DNA of 64,000 nt from Hamiltosporidium tvaerminnensis FI-OER-3-3 (lineage: Eukaryota; Fungi; Microsporidia): assembly GCA_022605425.2 (NCBI GenBank), contig JAKIMF020000007.1, forward strand, positions 496,001 to 560,000, given 5' to 3'. The notes beneath the pieces were generated by a model. The model was not told the origin of the DNA. It saw only the letters and a program-made list of their open reading frames with translations, and made no database searches. Positions 3 to 51,070 of the stretch are shown here, one piece after another. A program made the position numbers and the translations under genes. Within the stretch, counting starts at the first letter, position 1. The number at the start of each line of letters is the position of its first letter.

Positions 3-677
3 AAAATCACTTATGATTCTGCAAATAAGCTTTTTCATACTTTTTGTAAGCAAAAAACAAATTTGGGTAGCAATGTTGATGATATTTTAAGAGAGAAAAT
101 GAATAATATTGTAAAAAACAAGAAAATAGAGGATTTACTAGATTTTTGTAAAATTATTCAAACTTTTATTCGTATAAGTTTTGAATTCTATTTGCAAATC
201 GATAACTTTAAACAAGAAGACGCAAAGAATTCAGTAGAAAAACTTATTTCTACTGTGATTGATGGAATGTGTAACGAGTATAATAAAACAAGCAATCAAG
301 AAGAAATTGAGAAAATCAAAACAAAAGCATAAAAAAGCTTAACCGCTGTTTTTTCATACCTTAAATATTGCTGCAAAGAAGTGCTTGAACATTGTAAGAA
401 AGAAAATAATTTTACGCAAAACCACAACAAAAACGATAAATTTGATCCTGAAAATATCAACAAAGATATTGCACTTAAATTGCTCAAAGAAAAAATTATA
501 AAAAATATATCTCCTTTTAAAAAAGATCTTATTAATATTTTAAAATGTTTTTTTATGCGGTTTAAATTCACAGCGGAAGAAATATTTACCGATTATAACT
601 TTATTTTTGCTATTTCGGATTGTTTATTGCGAAACGCCATATCATCTTTAGAAATATTACAACCAATTTTTCAATAA
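3..677 (+). pseudogene. 3' part of a hypothetical-protein gene with one in-frame stop
   Basis: ORFs 63-332 and 381-677 share a frame that is open from the window start and between them except for TAA at 330-332. No recognisable domain. Confidence 0.35.
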
Positions 678-2422
678 AATGCAATGGATCTATATTTAAT
701 TTCTTCTTGTAATTTATGTATTTGAACAATATAAACCAATTTTTTGTGCCTAAGGTGCAGTGAACATATATCAGAATTGACTTCGAAATGCTGGTTTCGA
801 TGCACCTCTCTTGGTTAGTACATGCTCGTCCTTCCAATGAGAAAGTTTGCGTCGGGCCGACACCTTAAACTATCATGTGAAAACCCAACATCAATCTCAT
901 CTAATTCACGGTTATAGTTCATTCTGGATTCTGCTTCTATATGTAGGAAACTAATAAACAGAAAGAAAATCACAATTCCTGGTAATAAATATAATAGCTA
1001 AAAATATTTCGTTTTTCACGGCTTTCATGCTAGGTTTGATCTTTTGAAATCAAAGAAACATAATTTAATGACTTTTATACATAAACCTAAAGATGATATT
1101 ACCAGAGAATATCACAACAGTACAAATGTGTCAAATTAAATGCGAAAATTATTTTCAGAGACATACAAATATAAAAACGACGGATTCTATCTAAACTTAT
1201 CCCTCGCGAAATTTTGTAAAAATAACTACAAATTATACCAGTCCTAAATTACGTTACATTTTTAATATTCGATCTATAAACCTGCCAAAAATATGGTGAA
1301 CCTGATTATTAACATTCATAACATTGAACCCGATATAATATTCACAGAAAATACCTAAGTGTTAATGAGTAAAAAAGCAAATAATCGGGATTCTTTCTTA
1401 TAAAATTATCGAAGAGATTAAAAGATTTTTATAAAAACCGAAAAGTAAATGAACTTTGTTTTAATTAGTAATTTGGTTGTGCTATCGAGGTTCTTATGTT
1501 GAAATTTGCACTAAAGTAAGCTAAAAAAAAGAAATTTAATATTATAGATGGTAAATTCCCTCAATCATAGGAGTCATTATTCTTATCGATAGTATTTTTA
1601 TAGTAACCTAAGAAAATGATTTGTTTGAGAAAAAAGGGTATAAAACGATTTAAAAGGTGGTGTCCTAGCATATAAGCCTATAAGGTTTGTAAGTTATTAC
1701 TTAAATAATGTTTAGTGAATTATCTACTATATATATTTTAAAAACCTAAATTAATTTCTATAATTTCATTATAATGCAAACCCTACTGAGTAATAGAAGA
1801 GTTAGCACACAAAGCGAATTTTAGATGTGCGATTCAGATGAGCAATTCTAAAAATCCCATATTCGTTCTAAACTTATTTTTTTCAGTGGATAGACAAGCA
1901 CTTTTGTCTTCAAAAACTAAGAATAAGTTGGGAATAAAAAGGTCTAATGATAACCTAATAAAAATGACTGCTAAAAATACAATTGAATACATGAGTCCTT
2001 GAATCTTTCCTATATAAATTATCATTTAAAAGCCTAGAATGACTTGTTAAATTTTTTTTGGGATTATTGAGTAATTAAGAAGGAATTAATAAAGAGTTTT
2101 TAGCTGTTTATATATATTTATTATGCTAATGTCGGGTTTTAGATCTTAATTTCAGTAAAATGAAATATAAAAGCTTGTAATATATAAAATTAAATATTTT
2201 ATACCTGAATAGCTCAACAAAGCAAACTTCTTATATTTATATCATCATTCATTCATATATGTTTGACCAAGTTTAGGCTTTTTTATAAATGTATAAACAA
2301 ATGAAAAATTAGAATGAAATTCTTTTCTGGTATTACAAGTCCTTATGAATAAATTATCTCTTCGAACTGTTTGAAATACCTAAAATGTTGAACAGGATAT
2401 TATTAAGCTATGTTTAAAAAAA

Positions 2423-2650
2423 TTTTTCACCATGCTGGGAGCAGAATTGGCTTGGAGTATATTCGGCTTGTGGTAATAGGCAACTAAAAGAGACTGATAC
2501 TCCATGTTGAGCGTAGAGCTAACAACCCACTCATTAAAACACCCTTGTTACGAAACCTGAAAAAATAAACAAAACCTCTGGAAAAAGACCAGAAAGCTGT
2601 ATTACTAAGAGTGGCAAAGGCTCGTATAGGGTTCTATTGCCAAGAATGTA
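2423..2650 (+). mobile_element. Short non-autonomous RTE-related retroposon (SINE-like)
   Basis: Flanked by 14-bp direct repeats TATGTTTAAAAAAA (2409-2422, 2651-2664). Core GTTGAGCGTAGAGCTAACAACC...TTGTTACGAAACC and tail AGGCTCGTATAGGGTTCTATTGCCAA resemble the element at 62418-62611. Confidence 0.7.
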
Positions 2651-3799
2651 TATGTTTAAAAAAAAATCGCGTATTAGATTGTAATTTTACACCAAATTAA
2701 CTCTAATTTATGTTCTACTTATTGGTATTAACCAAGGAAATCATGTTTGAGTATTTCGATTTTTGATTCTTTTAAAAGTAATTAAAGTGTTGCTTTTTAC
2801 CATAACTTTCTAAAATGAAAATTAAACCTAAATTAAATTTATGCCCGAATAGGCATTGGAGTGGAAACCAAAAGAACGGAAATAAAACGAATAAAACGTT
2901 TTTGGAATGTTTTAATTAACACTTAAGTAGGATTTTGCAAATCATAGTCAAAATCTTCTTATTTTCTTAATTTTTAGAAAATGAATGAGTAGCAAAGTTC
3001 TTAAAAAATTCTAAATGCCATCTTATAAGGGGATTCAAGTTGGTTAACTAGATATTTTTTGAGATTAATTCAAAACAAAAATTACAAGCTATAATAAAGG
3101 ATCTCGTTTCTATAGCATAATAAATCCCTTTTGATTTTATGAAAAATTTGGCTATTTTTGAACAACAATAAAGAAAAGAGAAACATTTAGTCTAAATTAT
3201 GCGTTTTTATCATCTTTGCATCATAAAATGCGTGCTTTAGCAAAAATGATTTTCTTCCTAGCATTTGTTTACCTAGGAATTATATCAGCCTAACTAAAAT
3301 TACTACACGATTCTGTTTGCTTAAATTTTATTCGAATCGACATTTTTTGGCTTTTAAAATAATTACTTGAAAAAACATTCAACCAATAATTCTGTTTTTA
3401 TTTACGTATATAAATTTGCATGCAAATAGTGTCTTAATATATTAATTTCTCTTGTTAAGATGCATGTTTTAGTGCATAACTCAAATATTACTCATCCGAA
3501 AGTTAATGTGTTGGAATCATGCTTAAATAGTAAGGAATATTAAAGCATCGAATTCTATTTAATTAAGTAAATATTAAAAGATTGCATGGTTAATACACTA
3601 CATTATTAGGAGCGATCTAATTTTTAAAATGCTTGTATCAAATAAAAATTTTTCATAGAACATTCCACAGATTAATTTTAGAATATATTAGAAATATTAA
3701 TTCCCTTAACAATCCCATATAAGTTAAATATTGCTCAACAGAATAGGCAAGACCTACCAAACTTTCCTGCATTTATATGTTCGAAAATTCAGCAAAAAT

Positions 3800-4423
3800 T
3801 ATCTTGTTTTACTTTAACGAATTCATTTATTTTAAATTTAAAAATGTTAGACCCAAACTTTTGCAACAAAAAAATCAAACTAGTCTTTTTCCTTGAAATA
3901 TTCAATTTTAAGAGATTATAAAATCGGTTTTTGTTACTTTTATCTTGTTCATTTTGCTTTTGAATATGCTTCGTTCAGCTTAAAAACATCTTCTCATTCT
4001 TAATTCACCTCGATTTAGATGTTTGTTTCTTAACTATCCAGATTTGCTAAGCTTTAATCTTGATATTAGAATTAATTTAAAAATTATTTTTCTATTAAAT
4101 TGAAATTGTAGATATTTATTTTACTTTTGTTTCATTTAAGCTTCGGTTTGTATTCTTTTTGATTGATATACTTAAATCAGAGTAAAAGAACCTCTTTTTT
4201 CTAATTAAGCTCTAATTCAGTTTTACTGCCAATAAAGCTAAATATATATTGATTTTGTTCTTCTAAAATATAATATATTATCTAGATCAGGGGTCTCTAA
4301 AACTACCGCCCATGGATTATTTTTATTCGGGTTGCGGCGACATTTTTCTGGCTCGCTGCGATTTTTTTTAAATAAGGAAATTAAATAAAAAAATATGGAT
4401 AAATAATACAAAATAAATTGCAA
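3800..4423 (-). pseudogene. Possible degraded secreted or LRR-like lineage-specific gene
   Basis: ORF 4238-4423 begins with a hydrophobic signal-like segment (MQFILYYLSIFFYLISLF); coding-like but interrupted sequence continues downstream. Boundary approximate. Confidence 0.2.
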
Positions 4424-4926
4424 TTATAGACAATTAGGGCATGAATTTGTAATACAAAGAAGATTCATAGAGTTTTCATTATTTTTTGAAACTAACAATT
4501 ATTTTTTTATATTATATGCTAAAAAATTAACATGAATTAACAAAATACATATGACATGATTTATTAGTAATGAGAGTGATGTATTTGAGATTTCACAGGG
4601 ATGATTTGTTGAAATTGTAGAGTAAATTTAGAAGTAGAAATTATCAGTAACGACTTCAAGTACTTATCTGTTAATTTAGATCTGTAAATGTTTTTTGTAT
4701 ATTTACCTTAGAGGATGCTTCTTCGAAAAAAAACGGTAAATCCGAAAGCGGAAATAAAACTTTGAGAAAAATTATGAACGTGATTGAATTGCTTGTCTGG
4801 AAGACTCTTATAAAATTTCAGCTATTTATGTGTCTATTTTTATCTAGAAATATCGTTAATATAAATGTTTATTTTTATGAACATTTAAATGAAGTTTTAA
4901 AAATTTGATTTAAAAATATTCATAAT

Positions 4927-7043
4927 TGTCACGGGCCAATAAACCACCACCCCCTCATGTCCAATAGAACCCCGTTATTTTCTATACATTTTTAATCTTG
5001 ATAGCAGCACCCTTTATTTTTTCATATAGCCTTTTAAGTTCTATATCCTTATAACCCATTTATTCCCTTTATTGGTATAAACTTTCCTATTTTAGTTTTC
5101 TTTCCAATATTTCATATCCATCCTTTTTTAAAATTCCTTTTGTATAAACAATAGAAGGTGTTAAATATGAATAAAATATCCAATAAAATTTATATCTTTC
5201 TTTTCAGTTCTTTTTATGCTTCTTTCAGTTTTTTGCATTTGTTAGTATTTGTAAAGCAAAATTTTGTTGTAGAATTTGATACAGGCAATAAACAACGTAA
5301 CATTGTATATAAATTAATTTAAAGCTTTCATATTATTTGTTTTTTTACCAAGTATTCAATTTATATATACATAAAAATATAATGTAATTAGAATGCCAAA
5401 GATTGTAAGTTGTAACAATAGGCAAGAAAAATAAATTTTTGCAACAAATTTAAAAACCGGTCAGTATCCAGCTGAGCATTCCAAAGAAGAAAATAAGTTG
5501 TTTAAGCAGAACATTTTACTTTGCCCGGAACTGATATTTGTTTTAAAAGGCGGGATCATCTAATAAGAGCCGTTTTTGGATTTGAAACGGCCTTGATTGA
5601 ACAAATTATTGAAACACAACATGCTGTTGAACATTTCGGTTGAATAAAATGATGGCTTTGATTGTACAAAAATACTATGGTATTCTCAAGGCATACATAA
5701 AAGAGTATGTAAAAGACTGTGAAGTGTAGTCGATTTAATTCTCTAAAAACAAATCAGCCAATATATATAAATCATATTAGCAAAAAATATGATGTTTTTA
5801 AGATGGATTGTGTAGATCTCGAGAGATACTGTGATTAAAATGATAAATATAGCTGAATTATTAATGTAATCGACACATACACCAAACATCTTGCTGCTTT
5901 AAGCTGATTAATAAAACTTCGGAATTAGTAAGAGATTCATAAAAATTTTTATTTGACAACTTTGGTGTCCCGGTGGCAATACAATCCGATAACGGTCGAT
6001 AGTTTAAAAATACACTACTTGAAGCCTTTTTAACAAATCTTAACATCAAAATTATACATGGAAGACCACGCAATCTAAAGGCGCAAGGTCAAGTGGAACG
6101 TGTAAATCAAACCATAAAAAGATGGCTAGCGAAGAAACTGCATGAAACAGGAGGAATAAGGATAACGGAACATCTTAATAATGTTTTTTGTGTCCATAAC
6201 ATAACAATACATAGTGCAACAAACAAATCTCCATTTATGCTTTTCTTCGGACAACCAGGTTTTAACAATCCACTTTCTAGAAGCATAGTAGTTGAAAACG
6301 AAGCCAAAACGATAGTGCATTCTATTATTATAGATCCTGATATAGTTTTTTCGAAGAAAAGGCAGCAGATACATAATGAATCCTGGAAATCGCCTCGGAT
6401 GTACATTAAGAATTTACTGAAACGTTAACGACCACAACCACTATAATAGCTGATGATCTTGAAATCGATAGTAAAATTTGTTCGGAGGTGGCTAAGAATT
6501 TTAAAAATTATAGAGAAAGAATTATAGAAAGCAATAATTCGAATAAACTCAAGAGAGATTTGTCTACAGAAGATCAAGTTTTGATAAAAAAAAAGACTTC
6601 GATATGAATACTAAAACTAAAAGAGTGCCTTTTGACTCTTTTTACGATAATTCGGTCTTTACAGTTACCGCTATTTTGATGAGCAACATGATTGAAGTAA
6701 AAAACAATGATGGTGACACAAGAACAGTTTTTGGAACCGTAATAAAACGTGTTTAATTTAGTTTACTTTTCAACTATTATAGGCATTTTTTATTATTTAA
6801 GTATTACTGTTAAAGTTTTTATTCTTAGTCTGGCAAAACTTGAAATATTTTTTCCGGCGAAATTCAAGTTAAAAACTATATAAGCACTTTTTAAAGAGAC
6901 CCCCCATTAAATTAAGGGAAAAAATCACTTCCTTTTTTCAAATATATGGCCTTTAGGTAAAATATATGACAATAACGGGGCTTTATAAATTATATGAAAT
7001 AACGGCGTTCTATTAAACATGGGCGGTTTAGTGGGCCGTGACA
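4927..7043 (+). mobile_element. Ginger-like (gypsy-integrase-related) DNA transposon, degenerate
   Basis: TIRs TGTCACGGGCCAATAAACC...AATAGAACCCCGTTATTT and, on the reverse complement, TGTCACGGCCCACTAAACC...AATAGAACGCCGTTATTT. 5-bp TSD ATAAT (4922-4926, 7044-7048). Broken rve integrase (QSDNGR, HGRPR..AQGQVERVNQTIKRWL, HSATNKSPF). No RT. Confidence 0.85.
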
Positions 7044-7990: not shown

Positions 7991-8099
7991 TTAAATGATG
8001 AGCCTCATTAACTGTCGAAACCATTCCAAAAACAAATTAAAAAAATATAAAAATATAATTAAATAAATCAATTTTTTTTGTTTAAATTCATGTTTTAGT

Positions 8100-9920
8100 G
8101 GAAAAAAATATATTGTTTTTTTATCAGGTAAAAATCTTATCAAACTGAAATGGATTGCGACAAATATGGAAGTAATGACTTAAAAACTTTGCAATTACAG
8201 GAAATTTATCACCCGATATGAATTATGAACAGAAAATATGGTTTTAAAAACGAACCGTCGATGTATAACATCAAAAATTGGTATGTATATACAGAAGTGG
8301 TTGGCAACGTCATCAAAACATTTATAGCGGATGATGATAACCGAGCGCAAGCCAAAATTTTTGATTGTAATATCGTTCTAGTCATATTGGTATAAAAAAT
8401 ATACACCAGGAAATCATAAGAAAATACTACAGGTCTAAATGAGAGTGAACAGTGGTGTTCGTTAAAATATGCAAATATTTCCAGAATTAACAGCCTTTGA
8501 AGCTAACTGATGCGATTCAGAAGATAACTGCAAATTTTCGTTGGAAAAAAATTAGACTGAGTTTGTTGATATACGGAAATACCCTAAAGATGGTGCCAGT
8601 TATAGATGAATCTTAGACATTCTGGATGTAGACTCTAAGTTTTTATTTGACTACCAACGAAAACAAAGCCAGTAGTTGGTGTTGCAAATGCGCTTAAAAA
8701 TCTTATTTTCCTCGAAAGTGCCATCTAATATTCTACAAACGAATAATAAAAAGATTTTTGTAAGAGAACAAATAAAACAAATATTTGTTGATCACAACGT
8801 TTCTTAATTACAGTAAGAGAAAGGCATCCAAAAAATCACGGACAGGTTGCGAGCTGTAACCAGACAATTGAACCAAGTTTTCTATAAATATAAGAACATC
8901 TAACCAAAAACGATTCGATTAATAAAAAAATTGTACTTTGCTACAATTAGACCTGAAACTGTGCGATAAACGTAACTCCGAGGCATTTAGAGGTCTTGGA
9001 GGCAAGAATGATATTGAATACGAGAAGACCTATTTAATGAAGAACTTTCTTCAACCTTTAAAATAAATTCATATCTCGAAAATACAGACCAAAATATCGA
9101 AATGTTGTTTGATGAAGATCAAGTAGCTGTTGAGAATAAAAGATCCAGTAAAAATGATATGGTTCCACCGCTTTAACATAAATATCAGAACAAATATGTA
9201 GCTTGTATGAAAAATGAAGCGAAGGCCCACTTATTTCGTTCAAAATTGTATCTTAGGGATGTGGGCTATTAAAGAGAGATTTCGAGAATAATCAAATGAC
9301 TAACAAAGGCGAAATTATTGCCTTCTGTGAGGAAAAACTTCGGAAAGTTTTTACTAGAAGCGGCATTGACAATGCTTAAGTAGAATGTGCGCAATCAGAA
9401 AATTGTTTACAAAAATCGTATTTAAAAGTATCATTATGATGAAATATCTTATATTGCAAGAAAATAAAGGATCAAAACATCTTTTCTTAACATATATCGT
9501 TTACAGCTTTAGTCGCAATATTTTTCATTTTTTTTGAATTTAGCTTCTCAATGACTGTTTTTTTGATTTTCTACTTAATTTATTTCCTAAACTAAAAAAA
9601 TAAAAAAATGTTAAACGATCAAAAAATGTTTTTAAGAAGAATTAGAGGGAATAAATGAATTTGGTACTATTAAATCGAGATAATATATTGCTTTTAGAGC
9701 TCGGTATGAAAGTTTTTTGTGGAATGGCTAATAGTTGTGGAATAGGTTCAACATTAAATTTTTAACAATACTACCTTTTTTCAAATATATGCTGGCTTTA
9801 AGTTGGTATATATGGGAAATAACCCAGGATATAAAATATTATATCAAATATAGAGAGGTGGATGTATAGGAAGTAAAGGGAATATATTAGAAAATTGTAG
9901 GATTTATTGGTCCGTGGAAA
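8100..9920 (+). mobile_element. Degenerate integrase-type (Ginger-like) element of a different subfamily
   Basis: Integrase-like remnants (LQTNN, RHPKNHGQVASCNQT). Right end GGATTTATTGGTCCGTGGAA resembles the inverted TIR of the 4927 element. Its 3' region recurs at ~34600-35210. Confidence 0.5.
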
Positions 9921-43810: not shown

Positions 43811-43844
43811 TAGTAAATCTAAAAAAAAAGCATTAATAATAATA

Positions 43845-44168
43845 CTCACTCCCTCTCCCTATACTAACCTAACTACTAATATCTGTTCTCATAGTAGAGT
43901 TCCTCTGTCCTATTACTAACGTTATACTTACCCTATACTAACCCCATACCCTCTCTATCACTACCCTCTATCCTCATAAGACAGTTTTGTTGCCCCTGTC
44001 CCTATACTATACCCATACCCTCTCTATCACTACCCCATTACCTCTCTATCACTACCCCTATCCTCATAGTACAGTTCGGTTGCTCCTGTCCCTATACTAA
44101 CCCCATACCCTCTCTATCACTACCCCTATCCTCATAGTACAGTTCTGTTGCCCCTGTCCCTATACTAA
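43845..44168 (-). repeat. Tandem reiterations (~68-90 bp) of the RPC1 3' coding end
   Basis: CCTGTCCCTATACTA...CCCATACCCTCTCTATCACTACCCC...CCTCATAGTACAGTT occurs three to four times across the stop codon. Confidence 0.9.
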
Positions 44169-47100
44169 TACCCCTCCCCATAATAATAGACTCACTAACA
44201 CCTAAAACAGAATCTACATTTCCATACAAAGCAGCCTCAAACAAATGATCACCCGTTTGTTCAAAAGAAGCCAACATAAGTGTAGAACACTTCATCTTAC
44301 TAATACCAAACCTAGTAATACCTAGAACTTCACCTCTATATGTCATAGTATCTGCTAATAACATAACATGTCTACAATCTATTTTCATACCATGTTTACT
44401 CATCGTATACTCAACTTCATTTATTATTGACTGTCTTGCTCCTTCTATACCTAACACACTCTGTATCTCCATTATATTGTTACTACTTGTTTTTGTACTG
44501 TCTACACCTATACTACCTAATACACCTAATAATCCATTACCTTCTACTAGTAACGTATAATTTATATTTTCTCCTTTATGTAACACCACTCTTTGAACAC
44601 TCTTTAACCCACATATCACTACATTACGAACAGATCTCTTAATATCCTTCATAAAGTAATAATCAGAGATATTATTATTATATGGTGTGTTAGTAAGAGG
44701 GTGTTGTTTATATGGTGTGCTACTAACAGGGTGATAATTAGTAGTACTGTTACTAAGACCCTGTTGTTTATTGGTAGTATAGTTAACACCCTGTTGTTTA
44801 TTAGTACTATAGTTAACACCCCCATAATTACCACTACTGTCATTAACACCCCCTCCTACTTTAACACTATTATACCTTCTACTAATACCCCTTCTTATAC
44901 TCATCACAATAACGCCCCCCTTTATATACACATACTCCTTTCCTACCTTTAACTCCTCACATATTCTATTCTTAATACTAACCATATCAATATCTAAACA
45001 TAATAATTTAATAGTATTTAAATTAACACCTATTTCTATACTTATTTCATATTTACCATATATTTCTTTTATATAGGTACATACATCTTTAAGACATACT
45101 CTTTCTAACCTACCTTTAACACACCTAGCAAGAAGTTCAGGGTTATTATTATGATTAGTGTTAACAGGGTGATGAGTATTATTGGTATTATTAACAGGGT
45201 GTAAGTTATTACTTTTATCATTATCACCCTCCTGTTTACTACTCTTATAACTAACACCCTTTATATTACTATCCTTATCATTATCACCCTCCTGTTTACT
45301 ACTCTTATAACTAACACCCTCTACCATACTACCTCTATTACTAACACCCTCCTGTTTACTACTCTTATAACTAACACCCTCCTGTTTACTACTCTTATAA
45401 CTAACACCCTCTACCATACTACCTCTGTTACTAACACCCTCTACCATACTACTCTTATTACTAACACCCTCTAACATATTCTTACCCTCTTCCCCACTCT
45501 CTTGTTTACTAACACCCCCTTTACTCTCTACCACCCCCTTTATCCTTGTATTAATAATAGGTGTACTTATATTAACAGTAGCATTAATAATCTCTTTAAG
45601 TCTAGGAACACCAAGTGTTATATTCATACTAGCAACACCTGCAAAATGAAAAGTTTTAAGTGTCATCTGTGTACCAGGTTCTCCTATACTTTGACCTGCT
45701 AATGCACCTACAGCAGTACCAGGTTGTATTATACAATCATAATATCTATTAAGTACCCTAGAAGTAAACAAAGCAGCAAAGGTAGTAGTAATAGTGTTAT
45801 TGTTGTTAGTATTGTTATTGTTGTTAGTATTAGTAGTGTTGTTAGTGTTTATGTAACCGTTACTATCACCCTTATAATCATTACCCTTATCACTATCACC
45901 CCTACCCTTACTACCTCTATCCAACCTATTACCCTTACTATCACTGTTACTCTCAACTAGCTTTATATGCTTACCCTTTATAAATATAGTATCTCCTTCT
46001 TTACCCTTTAAAAAGGTATTTATTTTACTAAGAATAGTAGTGTTAGTAATAATATTAGTATTATGTATGTTGTTAGTATTAGTATTAGTATTATGTATGT
46101 TGTTATTGTTACTATATAACCTAATATCATATAACCTATTACTCTCTAACACACTACTCTCTAATACATCACCCTTTACTCCTAACATACTACTCTCTAA
46201 CACACCACCCTCTAATACATCACCCTTTACTCCTAACACACTACTCTCTAACACACCACCCTTTACTCCTAACATACTACTCTCTAATACACCACCCTCT
46301 ACTCCTAATACACCACCCTCTAATACACCACCCTCTAATACACCACCCTCTAATACACCACCCTCTAACACACTACTCTCTAATACACTACCCTCTACTC
46401 CTAACATACTATACTCCCTTATAATCTCCCCCTTTACTTCCCTGTATACCTTTTCTAAGTCAACAACACTACTCTCTTCTTCTACCAAACAAGGATCTAT
46501 ACAATCATCTCCATAAACAAACTGTACTACTTCATTACAAGAATTTCTAACACTATAATCATACTGTACAGATAAATCTTCTAAAGCTTTCATAAGTCTT
46601 CTTTGCATATATCCTGTTTCTGCAGTTTTAACAGCTGTATCTACAAGACCTTCTCTTCCAGAAACAGCATGAAAAAAGAATTCTATAGGATTTAAACCTG
46701 TAAAGAAAGAAGAACTAACAAATCCTTTACTTTGTGGTATAAGAGTCATTGGAGTGAAATGTGGTAAACTTCTTTTATAGAAACCGTTAGGTATACGATT
46801 ACCACTTATTATTTGTTGTCCTACACATGCTATCATCTGAGATACGTTTATTTTTGAACCTTTTGAACCACATGCTTGCATTATAAGAGGTGAATTCTTC
46901 TTGTTAAGTTCTTTTATACAAATGTTACCACATTTTTCTCTTATTTTACTTAAAATGCCAGATATGTTATTTTCAATGAATGTATTGTTATTTGTAATGG
47001 TTGTATTGTTATTAGTGGGTGTGATAGAGGGTGTGTTGGTTGTATTGTTAGTACTGTTATTATCACCCTTATAATTACCACTATTGTTATCACCCTGTTG

Positions 47101-50100
47101 TTCCTTATCCTTATAGTTATCACCCTGTTGTTTATTACTCTTATTACTATCACCCTTATAATTATTAGTACTGTCATTAATAGGGTGTAAAGTATTAGTA
47201 CTTATGTTATCACCCTTATAATTATTAGTACTTATGTTATCACCCTTATAATTATTAGTACTTATGTTATCACCCTTATAATTATTAGTACTTATGTTAT
47301 CACCCTTATAATTATTAGTACTTATGTTATCACCCTTATAATTATTAGTACTGTCATTAATAGGGTGTAAAGTATTAGTACTGTTATTATCACCCTTATA
47401 ATTATTAGTACTGTCATTAATAGGGTGTAAAGTATTAGTACTTATGTTATCACCCTGTTGTTCATTAGTACTGTTATTAACACTCTGTTGCTCCTTATCC
47501 TTATAGTTATCACCCTGTTGTTTACTACTAGTCTTACTATCACCCTTATAATAACTACTAGTCTTACTATCACCCTTATAATTACTACTAGTCTCACCTT
47601 CACCCCCCTCTAACACCCCCTCACCTAACACCCCCTCACCTAACACCCCCTCACCCTCTATACCCCCCTCCAATACACCACCCTCTATTATCCTTCTACA
47701 CTCTTCATACCCTTTCTTTACTATTTCATTCTTCTTCTTCTGTAAAATAACACTAGGATACACATCATCAATACCAATAGAAAACCCTATCTCCCCAATA
47801 TATCTACTACATAACCTAGATATACTATTCATAGCTCTTACACTACATATATTACTTATACACATTAATTTATACAAAATACTATTTTTCTTATTTTCAT
47901 TTCCTATTATTGATTTATCTAATTGTCCATATAAATAATAATTATTTTTAAATATTACTATACATTCATTATAAGTGTTATAAGTATATTCTTCTTTAAT
48001 ACATTCTTTATTCCTAGCATAAATATTTAGAAGGGTAGTATGTATGGTGTTAGTATGTATGGTATTAGTATGTATGGTATTAGTATGTATGGTATTAGTA
48101 TGTATGGTGTTAGTAGTATTGTTAGTATGTATGGTATTGTTATTGGTATGTGGGTGGGTAGTGTTAGTAGATATACTGTTAGTAGATATACTGTTATTAG
48201 ATATACTGTTATTAGATATACTGTTATTAGATATAGTATTGTTAGATATACTGTTATTAGATATAGTATTGTTAGATCTACTGTTATTACTATCACCCTT
48301 ATACATACTACTATTATCACCCTTATATATACTATTACCCCTATATATACTATTACTATCCCTCTTACTACTCTTATCCCTCTTACTACTATCACCCTCA
48401 CTATCACCCCCATTACTATATCTACTGTTGTTAGTATAAGGTGCTAGTGAGTCTTCTATTAGTATTTGTATTACTTGTTTACCTGTGTAAAGAGGAATAG
48501 GACGTAGTATTGTAGGGGGAAGAGTATAACGAGAGGTAGAGAAAGTAGTATAAGTAGTATTGTTAGTAGTAGTGTTAGTAGTAGTAGTGTTAGTAGTGTT
48601 GTTGTTAGTAGTATTGTTGTTAGTAGTATAAGGGTTCTTAGTATTACTTATGTCTTTACTACTATCCCGTTTACTAGTATTACCCTTATTACTACTACTA
48701 TCTCTACTACCTATATCCCTAGTATTACTTATATCCCTAGTATTACCCTTATTACTACTACTATCTCTACTACCTATATCCCTACTACTACCTATATCCC
48801 CCTCTAACATATCACTGTCCCCCTCGGTGTTTGGGGACCCGAGGAAGTAACAGATTAATTGAGAAAATCTTTGTTTTGTAAAGAATCTATCTTTACTTGT
48901 AAGTAAATAAGAAGCAGTAATAAAATCTTGTGTAGCTGCAACAAGAGGTTCTCCATTACGTGGTGTAACAATATTATTTCTTACTCGCATAAGTGTATGT
49001 GCTTCTGATTGTGCTTGTAGTGTTTGTGGGACATGTATGTTCATTTCATCTCCATCGAAGTCTGCATTATAAGGTGTACAGACACATTCATTAAATCTAA
49101 GTGTCTTATACGGCATAACTTTAACATGATGTGCCATTATAGAGAGTCTATGTAATGATGGTTGGCGGTTGAAAAGTACTATGTCTCCGTTTTGTAAGTG
49201 TCTTTCTACAATATCTCCTGGAAAAATATTTTCTGATATTTTTTTTCTGTCTCCATACTGTAAAAACCTTTTAAATTCTGTTTTTTTATTGTAAATATAA
49301 TTTGCACCGGGATGTGTGTGTGGACCTTTTATTATTAGTGATTTGAGGTGTTGTATGTTGTATTTGGTTACTGTTTCAGGAATAGTGAGTGTTTTTGCCA
49401 TTTGTATTGGAATACCTACTTGTTCTATGGAAAGATTAGGATCTGGAGATATAACAGTTCTACCTGTGAAATCTACACGTTTACCTGATAAATTACCTCT
49501 AAATCTTCCATGTTTTCCTTTAAGTCGTTGTATTAAACCACGTATCGGTTTAATCTGAGTATTGTTTGAAATTCCAGGTAAATCAGAATTTATAAGAAGA
49601 GAGACTTGTAGTTGTAAGAAATCCCAGTCTTCACTTATAATAGAGAGTTGGTTACCTTTTTGTAAACCTTTTATAAGTACCTGGTTGGTATGTATTATTT
49701 CACTTAATTTTACTGTTAAATCATCTTCATTTGAACCGTTTTCTGTTTCTGTAGCAACTGATGGTCTAATACATGCTGGTGGTATAAGTATGGTTTGTAT
49801 AAGTAAGTCTTTGGGTGGAAATGAAATACCAAGAAGGTTTGTGTCAGAAAGTGGTATTTTTTTAAAAAGATTTAATACTGTTTGTGGGTTTAATTCTTCT
49901 TTTATTTTTTCTTTTGTATTTTCTTTTGTATTTGTGGTTTTTAAAGTTTTATTTTTTTGTAAAGAATTAGTTTCTAAAATATTATTTTCTAATGAATTAT
50001 TCCCATATGAATTATTTACATATGAATTATCCCTCAGTAGATAATAAATTATTTACAATCTTATCAGAATTATTTCTACTCATAGATAATAAATTATTTC

Positions 50101-50729
50101 CATATGAACTATTCCCATATGAATTATCCCTCGTAGATAACTTATTATTTACATCCCTATATGAATTATTTCCTTCTAAATCTTTAAATATTACATTTTT
50201 TTCGTGATATAATTTAAACCCTGTTCCTTTCTTAATATTACCAGTTAATATATTCACAGATATAACATTTATGGAATTTTTTACATTCTTCCATAATTTT
50301 TTTAAGAATATTTTTATAAAAAATAATATTATTTCTAAGTGATTGTACTTTTTGAGTGTAAAAATGTTTTTTTAATGGAGAAAGAAGTATATTACCACAG
50401 TTTTTACATATACATTGTAATATATGACATGTGTGTTTAAAGAATCCTATATGGAATACTGGAAGTATTAATTCGTAAGAACCGAAATGACCAGCACAGT
50501 CTTTTATTGATTGGTTGCATGTAGAACACGTACCGGTTTTGTTGCTTATACCTAAACGTGTGTCTAATACACCGTTGGGCATTGGTTGTTTTGTGGTTGA
50601 GTCGTACATTTCTTTTTTTGTGAGTTTGAGAACTGAAAGACGGTTTATTTGGTCGGTGGAAAATATTTTAAATTTAATTTCTTTTATTTTTGTTGAGGTT
50701 GTGTTGTATGAAGATAATGTTTTTTTCAT
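44092..50729 (-). CDS. RPC1: DNA-directed RNA polymerase III largest subunit (~2211 aa after removing two single-base insertions at 50243 and 50036)
   Basis: CSTC..C.GHFG Zn site, RLKGKHGRFRGNLSGKRVDF, catalytic YNADFDGDEMN, GREGLVDTAVKTAETGY. Pol III-type TLKTFHFAGVASMNITLGVPR and GITRFGISKMK..LASFE.T.DHLF. No CTD heptads. The span of 6638 nt minus 2 gives 2212 codons. Confidence 0.93.
47190..47450 (-). repeat. 30-bp coding minisatellite (GDNISTNNYK)n inside RPC1
   Basis: TTATCACCCTTATAATTATTAGTACTTATG occurs about five times, plus variant units encoding TLHPINDS. Confidence 0.95.
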
Positions 50730-50844: not shown

Positions 50845-51070
50845 ATCTTACATCTTACTTCTTACTTCTTTCTTCTTACTTTATATTTTATTATCTTACT
50901 TCTTACTTATTACTTCTTACTTTGTATTTCATTTATATTTCTTCTTTCTTCTTACTTATTACTTATTACTTATTACTTCTTACTTCTTACTTCTTACTTA
51001 TTACTTATTACTTATTACTTCTTACTTATTACTTATTACTTCTTACTTCTTACTTCTTACTTCTTACTTT
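50845..51070. repeat. (CTTA/CTT/TTA) compound microsatellite upstream of RPC1
   Basis: TTACTTCTTACTTATTACTT reiterations. Confidence 0.9.

What the first reader, a model, noticed from the sequence alone, without database searches (positions are those of the whole stretch)
44668..50190. RPC1 is expanded by seven in-frame repeat insertions, most with G-rich/C-rich self-complementary polarity
Seen: low-complexity inserts at about 49900-50190, 48525-48838, 48030-48445, 46978-47685, 45781-46420, 45139-45545 and 44668-44880 sit between conserved blocks and together add roughly 2.5-3 kb. The six downstream inserts keep frame. On the coding strand these six begin with G-rich, C-poor sequence (Gly/Ser/Val/Glu/Asp/Arg) and end with C-rich, G-poor sequence (Thr/His/Pro/Asn). 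The halves share reverse-complementary words: AACAGGGTG 44725-44733 vs CACCCTGTT 44787-44795; TAGTAGTATAAGGGT 48621-48635 vs ACCCTTATTACTACTA 48682-48697; AGGGTG ('EGV/GD') vs CACCCT ('HP') in several inserts. Separate inserts reuse the same AGGGTG(A/T)TA vocabulary. Inference: this is not simple slippage but a family of hairpin-forming intragenic elements. They could be in-frame palindromic parasites analogous to Rickettsia palindromic elements, fold-back-driven expansions, or structured segments removed or bypassed at the RNA level.
Basis: partly seen in the sequence, partly recalled or inferred. Interest (0 to 1): 0.8.

Follow-up and report, generated by a model that had tools for sequence, protein, structure and literature searches.

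The report
In-frame repeat inserts swelling microsporidian RPC1
The largest subunit of RNA polymerase III of the microsporidian Hamiltosporidium tvaerminnensis is about 60% longer than in its relatives because its surface loops carry translated tandem-repeat inserts; these belong to a genus-specific repeat family found in many genes, and they almost always run from G-rich to C-rich for a reason that is still unknown.

Summary
Six in-frame, stop-free inserts, plus a seventh that is frame-broken in the assembly, lie between conserved RPC1 blocks and add about 2.5 kb. Each runs from G-rich/C-poor to C-rich/G-poor.

The genome is a microsporidian, almost certainly Hamiltosporidium tvaerminnensis. 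It is not Plasmodium.

The hairpin reading mostly fails:
- Only 1 of 4 inserts run through strand folding (1 of 7 units in my own shuffles) folds clearly better than dinucleotide shuffles.
- The inverted words are no longer than codon shuffles give.
- Both arms are A>T and share one codon phase, so they are not reverse complements.

The C-type units look like G-type units with a short core flipped (NAG-GGT to NAC-CCT).

The "family" reading is supported:
- The inserts are 15/30-nt tandem arrays.
- The insert-5 array recurs at 143 or more places in the genome. About 134 of these lie in open frames of at least 300 codons.
- In 5.8 billion proteins it matches only Hamiltosporidium proteins.
- H. 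magnivora and H. tvaerminnensis orthologues of another gene keep inserts at the same sites and differ by whole 10-residue units.

The polarity is general: 25 of 44 coding low-complexity regions run G>C and none runs C>G. Core pairs give 151 versus 46.

RNA-level removal is unlikely. RNA reads could not be obtained. Other first readers of this scan noted the same polarity in Argonaute and TOP2.

The parts
44092..50052 (-). Main open frame of RPC1: 1986 codons stop to stop, with an ATG-started ORF at 44092-49401. It carries Rpb1 domains 2-5 and inserts 1-6.
50238..50729 (-). N-terminal piece of RPC1 (163 aa, Rpb1 domain 1). In the assembly it is in a different frame from the rest of the gene.
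49900..50190 (-). Insert 0. It is Asn/Ser/Tyr-rich and is a 97-nt tandem duplication (1.9 copies). Its G-to-C trend is weak. It contains the second +1 frame break, near 50030.
48541..48837 (-). Insert 1 (99 aa): a G arm of the (S/G/D/R/K) type, then a Thr/Asn arm. It is the only insert that folds clearly better than shuffles.
48040..48408 (-). Insert 2 (123 aa): 15-nt arrays, with a G arm followed by an (NNSIS)n and (TNTIH)n C arm.
46996..47679 (-). Insert 3 (about 228 aa): a GVLEG-type start, then 30-nt units NYKGDNISTN interleaved with TLHPINDSTN, then a Thr/Asn/Pro tail.
45793..46404 (-). Insert 4, composite. It holds a (GVLEG/SSVLE)n array with no C, then an Asn/Thr/His tail, then a short non-repetitive piece, then a second G-then-C unit.
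45148..45534 (-). Insert 5 (129 aa): 8.9 copies of a 30-nt unit (EGVSYKSSKQ type), then an LHPVN tail. This was the query that revealed the genome-wide family.
44689..44895 (-). Insert 6 (69 aa): 30-nt units that switch from KQQG(V/L) to YHPV and KQHPL. This is the clearest case of a flipped core with directly repeated flanks.
43814..44168 (-). Tandem duplication (periods 68 and 90 nt) of the last RPC1 codons and the G-rich tail. It runs past the stop codon.
50846..51069 (-). A 7-nt satellite (32 copies) just upstream of the start codon. Its period is not a multiple of 3, unlike every array inside the CDS except the frame-breaking 97-nt duplication in insert 0.

Best explanation
The inserts are translated, lineage-specific low-complexity expansions sitting in permissive loops of RPC1. 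They are tandem arrays of 15- and 30-nt units, that is 5 or 10 codons. They belong to a Hamiltosporidium-specific family of coding minisatellites that sits in the sense strand of many unrelated genes.

Shown:
- Arrays grow and shrink by whole units.
- The family is shared at the nucleotide level between genes.
- It is nearly confined to open reading frames.
- The inserts existed before H. tvaerminnensis and H. magnivora split.

Inferred:
- Units spread between genes by ectopic recombination or templated repair between look-alike arrays. That process keeps sense paired with sense.
- Only in-frame, hydrophilic, loop-located copies survive, in a parasite whose selection is thought to be weak.
- C-type units arise from G-type units by an in-place flip of a quasi-palindromic core (AACA-GGG-TGTT to AACA-CCC-TGTT; NAG-GGT to NAC-CCT).

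The G-then-C order is real and general, but its cause is not established. Inheritance of a founder architecture is my preferred guess. The modest arm-to-arm pairing is a by-product of composition.
For: - Inserts are absent from 12 orthologues.
- No stops in frame and all lengths are multiples of 3.
- Both arms show strong codon periodicity, R-N-T in the G arm and A-N-Y in the C arm.
- Periods inside the CDS are multiples of 3, against 7, 20 and 22 nt outside it.
- Insert 5 matches at least 95 places at 67-84% DNA identity.
- At the protein level there are 143 matches. About 134 lie in open frames of at least 300 aa, and only 5 have stops.
- Where the host gene's strand is known (SNF2 and helicase genes), the matches lie on the same strand as the gene.
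- All 20 database hits are Hamiltosporidium proteins of diverse function.
- In the H. magnivora and H. tvaerminnensis orthologues the blocks are almost identical, the inserts sit at the same sites in the same order, and they differ by indels of 10 or 20 residues. The DNA of the H. magnivora copy shows the same G>C order.
- Core spacing is quantised at 29 and 31 nt and the codon phase is shared.
- Pure GGG or CCC cores number 157 against 22 mixed ones.
- Iso-Seq in this species gave 98 predicted and 17 confirmed introns, mean length 28 bp (PMC10542269).
Against: - There is no RNA or peptide evidence for RPC1 itself.
- Spread by ectopic recombination is inferred, not observed.
- Descent from one founder does not easily explain why arrays with quite different units (GDIGV, RDIGN, EGEG...DKKK) show the same order.
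- A cruder amino-acid proxy on 20 deposited proteins gave only 44 G>C against 22 C>G.
- Two frame breaks in the N-terminal part are unexplained.
Confidence: 0.62

Rival explanations
1. The inserts are copies of a hairpin-forming, palindromic mobile parasite comparable to Rickettsia palindromic elements. It inserts anywhere and is tolerated when it lands in frame.
For: - A shared core and the G-then-C order occur in many genes.
- Adjacent G-type and C-type cores can form 8-9 bp stems.
- Insert 1 folds better than all 200 shuffles.
- One degenerate copy lies outside any intact frame (L024).
- Copies also occur in a broken MULE-like transposase gene (L022).
Against: - Six of seven units are within about 2.5 SD of dinucleotide shuffles.
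- Inverted words are at chance level.
- The arms are not reverse complements.
- Cross-gene matches are same-sense, with almost none in reverse complement.
- About 94% of the protein-level matches lie in long open frames, although only about a quarter of the genome is coding.
- No defined ends or target-site duplications were seen.
- Copies differ in unit type and number, not as copies of one element.
Confidence: 0.1
2. The inserts are removed from the transcript or bypassed by the ribosome. The arm pairing would bring the flanks together.
For: - Predicted folds pair the two arms.
- Ab initio gene finders once predicted 890-5,708 introns of about 200-300 bp in Hamiltosporidium (PMC6944219).
Against: - Excised or bypassed segments do not need to keep frame or avoid stops, yet all six do. 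The same holds in two species.
- Iso-Seq cut the intron count to 98 predicted and 17 confirmed, mean length 28 bp.
- Deposited protein models contain the arrays.
- No Rfam family matches the region.
Confidence: 0.03
3. The G-then-C order is a mutational footprint rather than an inherited one. Recurrent breaks inside the arrays would be followed by 5'-3' resection and loss of cytosine from the single-stranded 3' tails. This depletes C to the left of a break and G to the right, on both strands.
For: - It predicts a gradient with the observed symmetry on both strands. The G and C counts do change gradually along inserts 2, 3 and 5.
- C arms are somewhat richer in A than G arms.
Against: - The predicted spill-over into conserved flanks is absent. 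With blocks defined by ungapped matches in RPC1, RPB1 and RPA1, third-position G/C is 73/28 before inserts and 52/18 after them (p = 0.86).
- Weaker earlier signals came from boundary contamination.
- Depletion alone cannot explain arms with 25-42% G or 25-32% C in a genome with 26.6% G+C.
Confidence: 0.07
4. The decapeptide arrays are a selected protein module, for example a disordered spacer with a Gly/charged half and an Asn/Thr/His/Pro half. The order would then be a property of the protein.
For: - The family is nearly confined to coding sequence and always in sense.
- It is kept at the same sites with the same order in two species.
- The order also holds for arrays with unrelated units.
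Against: - The host proteins are functionally unrelated.
- The arrays change copy number quickly while their flanks stay almost identical.
- They also occur in a decaying transposase gene.
- No function can be tested with these tools.
Confidence: 0.12

Closest known systems
Low-complexity inserts in conserved Plasmodium proteins, including the enlarged largest subunits of P. falciparum RNA polymerases II and III (from my own knowledge of the literature, not checked here)
   Same: In-frame, hydrophilic, repeat-rich inserts between conserved blocks of housekeeping enzymes in an AT-rich parasite genome. They are absent from orthologues and evolve quickly by slippage.
   Different: - The host here is a microsporidian, a group known for shortened proteins.
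- The units are a shared 30-nt family with an AGGGTG/CACCCT core rather than mainly Asn runs.
- Every insert has a G-then-C order. I know of no report of that for Plasmodium.
Rickettsia palindromic elements
   Same: A dispersed family of short elements found in frame inside unrelated protein-coding genes, at sites that tolerate them.
   Different: - Those are single copies of a defined consensus of about 100-150 bp that folds into a long hairpin, and they also lie in non-coding DNA.
- Here the inserts are tandem arrays of variable unit and length.
- They are not palindromic and are nearly confined to the sense strand of open frames.
Coding minisatellites that evolve in concert, such as fungal adhesin repeats and parasite surface-antigen repeats
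   Same: Units are multiples of 3 nt. Copy number changes by whole units between close relatives, and nucleotide-level homogeneity is higher than the peptide would require.
   Different: Those repeats belong to one gene or gene family. Here the same unit family sits in loops of dozens of unrelated housekeeping genes.
Repeat-rich coding regions of Eimeria: homopolymeric amino-acid repeats and telomere-like heptamers (from my own knowledge)
   Same: A genome-wide simple-repeat vocabulary that invades coding sequence in frame.
   Different: - No telomere-like words occur here. GGGTT, GGTTA, TAACC and CCTAA are absent from the arms.
- The unit length differs.
- The polarity rule is not a feature of Eimeria repeats as far as I know.
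Translational-bypass 'byp' elements of Magnusiomyces mitochondria and phage T4 gene 60 (from my own knowledge)
   Same: G+C-richer inserts with pairing potential inside genes of an AT-rich genome.
   Different: - Bypassed elements are short and break the frame or carry stops.
- These inserts are 200-700 nt long and open in frame.

Membership tests
Lineage-specific in-frame low-complexity insert (Plasmodium type) | Lies between conserved blocks and is absent from orthologues | tested here: met
   Alignment with 12 orthologues and with yeast RPC1.
Lineage-specific in-frame low-complexity insert (Plasmodium type) | Keeps the reading frame and has no stops | tested here: met
   0 stops in 852 codons against 29-300 in the other frames. 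All lengths are multiples of 3.
Lineage-specific in-frame low-complexity insert (Plasmodium type) | Built of tandem repeats that change in copy number between close relatives | tested here: met
   TRF periods of 15, 30, 60 and 90 nt. Whole-unit indels separate the H. magnivora and H. tvaerminnensis copies of another host gene. No RPC1 orthologue from a close relative could be found.
Lineage-specific in-frame low-complexity insert (Plasmodium type) | Retained in mRNA and protein | not testable with these tools
Indirect evidence only: deposited protein models contain the arrays and Iso-Seq found few, short introns.
Palindromic in-frame mobile element (Rickettsia palindromic element type) | Sequence folds into a long hairpin beyond what composition gives | tested here: not met
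   z = -3.25 for insert 1 only. The others are +0.89, -0.30 and -0.70. Inverted words are at chance level.
Palindromic in-frame mobile element (Rickettsia palindromic element type) | Copies share one consensus with defined ends | tested here: not met
   Only a 30-nt unit and its core are shared. Exact matches between genes are 18-21 nt. Arrays differ in unit type and number.
Palindromic in-frame mobile element (Rickettsia palindromic element type) | Found in coding and non-coding DNA, in either orientation | tested here: not met
   About 134 of 143 protein-level matches lie in open frames of at least 300 aa. Matches are same-sense (against 31, 34). A few degenerate copies exist. The DNA-level census was only partly checked.
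Intron or other intervening sequence removed from RNA | No constraint on frame or stops, plus splice or processing signals | tested here: not met
   Frame and stop constraints are strong. There is no Rfam match. Confirmed introns of the species average 28 bp. Splice signals were not searched.
Interstitial telomeric repeats from telomerase-healed breaks (head-to-head arrays would give G then C) | Arms made of TTAGGG and CCCTAA or close variants | tested here: not met
   TTAGGG and CCCTAA are absent from the RPC1 arms. GGGTT, GGTTA, TAACC and CCTAA occur 0 times, below the shuffle means. The enriched core is AGGGTG.

The most novel reading that the evidence does not exclude
Hamiltosporidium harbours a self-propagating, coding-strand-specific minisatellite. 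It is a 30-nt in-frame cassette with a built-in G-then-C architecture that colonises the loops of housekeeping proteins through a repair or template-switching route. That would make it a new kind of selfish element, one that lives only inside open reading frames. Its orientation rule would then record the mechanism of insertion.
Probability: 0.2. Interest if true: 0.8.

Novelty: new variant of a known kind. Interest (0 to 1): 0.55.

Why it matters
Microsporidia are the textbook case of protein and genome shrinkage. Here a large-genome microsporidian has lengthened core enzymes (RNA polymerases I, II and III, topoisomerase II, helicases and trafficking proteins) by about half, using one shared repeat family.

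The family may explain why ab initio gene finders once predicted hundreds to thousands of long "introns" in this genus. It is also a trap for annotation and orthology pipelines.

The strict G-then-C order was 25 to 0 in my sample and 151 to 46 for core pairs genome-wide. It is a simple quantitative rule with no accepted mechanism. It holds on both strands, so it points to a DNA-level process or an inherited architecture rather than to transcription direction. It can be tested directly with the population and long-read cDNA data that exist for this Daphnia parasite.

Tried and rejected
1. Plasmodium origin. Rejected: the best hits are microsporidian, and the assembly statistics and named hits identify Hamiltosporidium tvaerminnensis.
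2. True palindrome or fold-back origin. Similarity between a G arm and the reverse complement of a C arm is weak and not insert-specific. Direct similarity with G and C swapped is stronger. A/T composition and codon usage do not fit.
3. Telomerase-healed breaks giving head-to-head telomere repeats. There are no telomere-like words.
4. Resection and deamination footprint. There is no skew in strictly conserved flanks. The earlier positive signals were contaminated by insert edges.
5. General genomic polarity. In 200 kb of random DNA, weak G>C and C>G switches outside long frames were balanced, 8 against 10. A looser run-based count was uninformative.
6. A second, insert-free RPC1 copy. None exists: the genome has three Rpb1-type genes, one per polymerase.
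8. More genomic sampling. The census therefore rests on about 300 kb plus coordinate-only searches.
9. Close RPC1 orthologues. None appeared in two protein searches, so the RPC1 inserts themselves could not be compared between species.
11. The N-terminal pieces of the gene were analysed separately.
Full report
**What is there**

The region encodes the largest subunit of RNA polymerase III on the minus strand. An ATG-started ORF at 44092-49401 (1769 aa) carries Pfam Rpb1 domains 2-5, and a separate ORF at 50238-50729 carries domain 1. Solved yeast and human RPC1 match at E 6e-248 and 3e-241, in blocks separated by long unmatched stretches.

The best database relatives are microsporidian RPC1 proteins of about 1200-1360 aa, from Astathelohania, Encephalitozoon, Vairimorpha and Nosema. 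They are 66-71% identical over the blocks.

The genome has 21,638,905 bases in 17 contigs, with a third-largest contig of 1,444,059 bases. These figures match the published assembly of Hamiltosporidium tvaerminnensis: 17 contigs, 21.64 Mb, N50 1.44 Mb, GC 26.6% (PMC10542269). A later search returned proteins named H. tvaerminnensis. One of them has a longest contig of 1,973,229 bases, which is exactly the length of contig 1. The genome holds a single RPC1 gene.

**Checking the observation**

I aligned the 1986-codon open frame with 12 orthologues. Lineage-specific inserts fall at 48541-48837, 48040-48408, 46996-47679, 45793-46404 (composite), 45148-45534 and 44689-44895, together at least 737 residues. 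A seventh insert lies at about 49900-50190.

- All six insert lengths are multiples of 3.
- The coding frame has no stop in 852 codons. The other two sense frames have 50 and 300 stops, and the antisense frames have 29, 29 and 106.
- On the coding strand each insert starts G-rich with almost no C and ends C-rich with almost no G. The change is a gradient rather than a step in inserts 2, 3 and 5.

**Is it self-complementary and hairpin-forming?**

Mostly not.

- Folding. Strand folding gives z = -3.25 for insert 1 (0 of 200 shuffles fold as well), +0.89 for insert 2, -0.30 for insert 5 and -0.70 for insert 6. My own runs on seven units gave dinucleotide-shuffle z-scores of -2.75, +1.43, -1.47, -0.69, -2.42, -0.02 and -0.27. 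Energies per 100 nt were like those of the conserved blocks.
- Inverted words. The longest exact inverted words (8-11 nt) are no longer than in codon shuffles.
- Arm similarity. Local similarity between a G arm and the reverse complement of its own C arm is low. It is no higher than with the C arm of another insert.
- Composition. Both arms have more A than T on the coding strand, which a palindrome cannot have.
- Codon pattern. Both arms share one codon pattern, purine-rich first position and T-rich third.
- Reduced alphabet. With G and C treated as one letter, the arms are more alike in direct orientation than in reverse complement. Insert 6 gives z = 10 direct against 5 reversed.

The C-type units are G-type units whose short core is flipped in place. 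KQQG-V (…CAA CAG GGT GTT) becomes KQHP-V (…CAA CAC CCT GTT) with identical flanks. AGGGT and ACCCT sit in the same codon phase in each gene. Pure GGG or CCC cores number 157 against 22 mixed ones. Because AACA-GGG-TGTT is a quasi-palindrome, such a flip creates the "reverse-complementary words" without any inverted arm.

**Is it a family?**

- Array structure. Tandem Repeats Finder shows arrays of period 15, 30, 60 and 90 nt inside the CDS. Outside it the periods are 7, 20 and 22 nt. The one exception inside the CDS is the 97-nt duplication in insert 0, discussed under open points.
- Other polymerases and TOP2. RPB1, RPA1 and TOP2 of the same genome carry 3, 9 and 7 inserts of the same kind.
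- DNA matches. Insert 5 as a DNA query finds at least 95 places at 67-84% identity over 45-350 nt, mostly 200-330.
- Protein matches. As a protein query it finds 143 places. About 134 of these lie in open frames of at least 300 codons, and only 5 contain stops.
- Orientation. Where the host gene is known from my Pfam searches (SNF2 and helicase genes), the match is on the gene's strand.
- Short shared words. Exact matches between genes are same-sense 18-21-mers, such as those encoding STNKQQG, MLEGVS, TNTLHP and GDIGVGD. Reverse-complement matches are almost absent.
- Taxonomic range. Against 5.8 billion proteins the insert-5 region matches 20 proteins, all from H. tvaerminnensis or H. magnivora. 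They have unrelated functions: VPS13, AAA ATPases, Sec7, an RNA polymerase beta-type subunit, a DIS3-like nuclease, PI4-kinase and others.
- Comparison between species. For a midasin-like ATPase, the two species' copies are almost identical in the conserved blocks. They keep inserts at the same sites and in the same G-then-C order, and they differ by indels of 10 or 20 residues, that is whole units. The H. magnivora DNA shows the same skew pattern.

The inserts are therefore older than the species split. They are maintained in frame and turn over by unit gain and loss.

**The polarity**

I took all low-complexity segments inside open frames of at least 200 codons in the roughly 300 kb I held. 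Of these, 25 run G to C, none runs C to G, and 19 are neutral. The neutral ones are mostly single arms of split inserts.

Genome-wide, AGGGTG followed within 10-40 nt by CACCCT occurs at 151 sites, and the reverse order at 46. The backwards-read controls give 0 and 1. Spacing is quantised at 29 and 31 nt, as expected for a 30-nt unit in one frame.

A sequence that runs G then C reads G then C on the other strand too. The rule is therefore not tied to the direction of transcription.

Outside long open frames, weak switches of either sign were balanced at 8 against 10. The few degenerate family copies I could inspect kept the order.

A crude amino-acid proxy on the 20 deposited proteins was less clean, 44 against 22. 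I attribute this to poor segmentation, but it is a caution.

**Why the order exists is not settled**

I tested two mechanisms that would give this symmetry.

- Head-to-head telomere repeats from telomerase-healed breaks. This fails because telomere-like words are absent and the enriched core is AGGGTG.
- Loss of cytosine from resected single strands around recurrent breaks. This predicts skew in the conserved flanks. With strictly defined blocks in three polymerase genes there is none: third-position G/C is 73/28 before inserts and 52/18 after them, p = 0.86. Earlier apparent signals came from insert edges counted as flank.

What remains is either inheritance of a founder architecture spread between arrays, or selection on the peptide. 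Neither was tested.

**RNA-level removal**

The indirect evidence is against removal:

- The frame and stop constraints are strong.
- The inserts are conserved in frame in two species.
- The arrays are present in deposited protein models, including those of the Iso-Seq-guided annotation.
- The published finding is that this species has only 98 predicted and 17 confirmed introns, mean length 28 bp. Ab initio prediction had given 890 or more introns of about 200-300 bp. I infer that many of those phantom introns were inserts of this kind.
- No Rfam family matches the region.

**Open points in the gene itself**

The assembly shows two +1 frame breaks in the N-terminal part.

- The first lies in the conserved zinc-binding motif near 50240. 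Orthologues there read C-x-x-x-N-G-x-I-K-K-G.
- The second lies inside insert 0 near 50030, in the second copy of a 97-nt duplication.

The remaining 1986 codons are intact and this is the only RPC1 gene. I therefore take the breaks to be consensus errors or something corrected at expression, but I could not test this.

**Verdict**

The hairpin, parasite and excision readings are not supported. The family and the polarity are real and extend across the genome and the genus.

The kind of thing, in-frame low-complexity expansion of a housekeeping enzyme in an AT-rich parasite, is known from Plasmodium. Three features appear to be undescribed: its occurrence in a microsporidian, the shared 30-nt coding unit with a flippable core, and the near-absolute G-then-C order. 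I found no paper describing them.

Noticed in passing
window 50235-50245 and 50025-50035: Two single-base (+1) frame breaks in the N-terminal part of the only RPC1 gene. The first is in the conserved C-x-x-x-N-G-x-I-K-K-G motif. The second is in the second copy of a 97-nt duplication inside insert 0. They may be assembly errors or something corrected at expression. Reads were not available.
   Followed up: partly
window 43814-44168: The last roughly 20 codons of RPC1, with a G-rich tail, are tandemly duplicated 2-3 times past the stop codon (periods 68 and 90 nt).
   Followed up: partly
window 50846-51069: A 7-nt satellite (TCTTACT on the plus strand, 32 copies) lies directly upstream of the RPC1 start. 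A C-rich stretch follows on the coding strand, so the promoter region also runs G then C.
   Followed up: no
L022 (G000:C8:200001-210000), about 400-6300: A broken Mutator-like transposase gene (SWIM zinc finger, FAR1-like domain) carries the same repeat family in several frames. The family therefore also sits in transposon genes.
   Followed up: partly
L024 (G000:C9:200001-210000), 8060-8760 minus strand: A degenerate copy of the insert-5-type array (27-nt units, then AAGGGT units, then CACCCTC units) with stops in all frames. It keeps the G-then-C order outside any intact open frame.
   Followed up: partly
L028/L029 (G000:C1:338053-343080): TOP2 is split in the assembly into two overlapping open frames of 405 and 939 codons. 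The break lies inside a C-rich low-complexity arm. This is a second essential gene with a frame break.
   Followed up: no
G000:C12:239600-257300 and C12:2460300-2472900: Open frames of 2408, 4388 and 5245 codons hold many insert-5-like arrays. They may be giant repeat proteins or arrays that stay open by composition alone. I saw coordinates only.
   Followed up: no
literature (PMC6944219 against PMC10542269): Ab initio prediction gave 890-5,708 introns of about 200-300 bp in Hamiltosporidium, whereas Iso-Seq supports 17 introns of about 28 bp. The in-frame inserts described here are a likely source of the phantom introns. This is an inference.
   Followed up: partly
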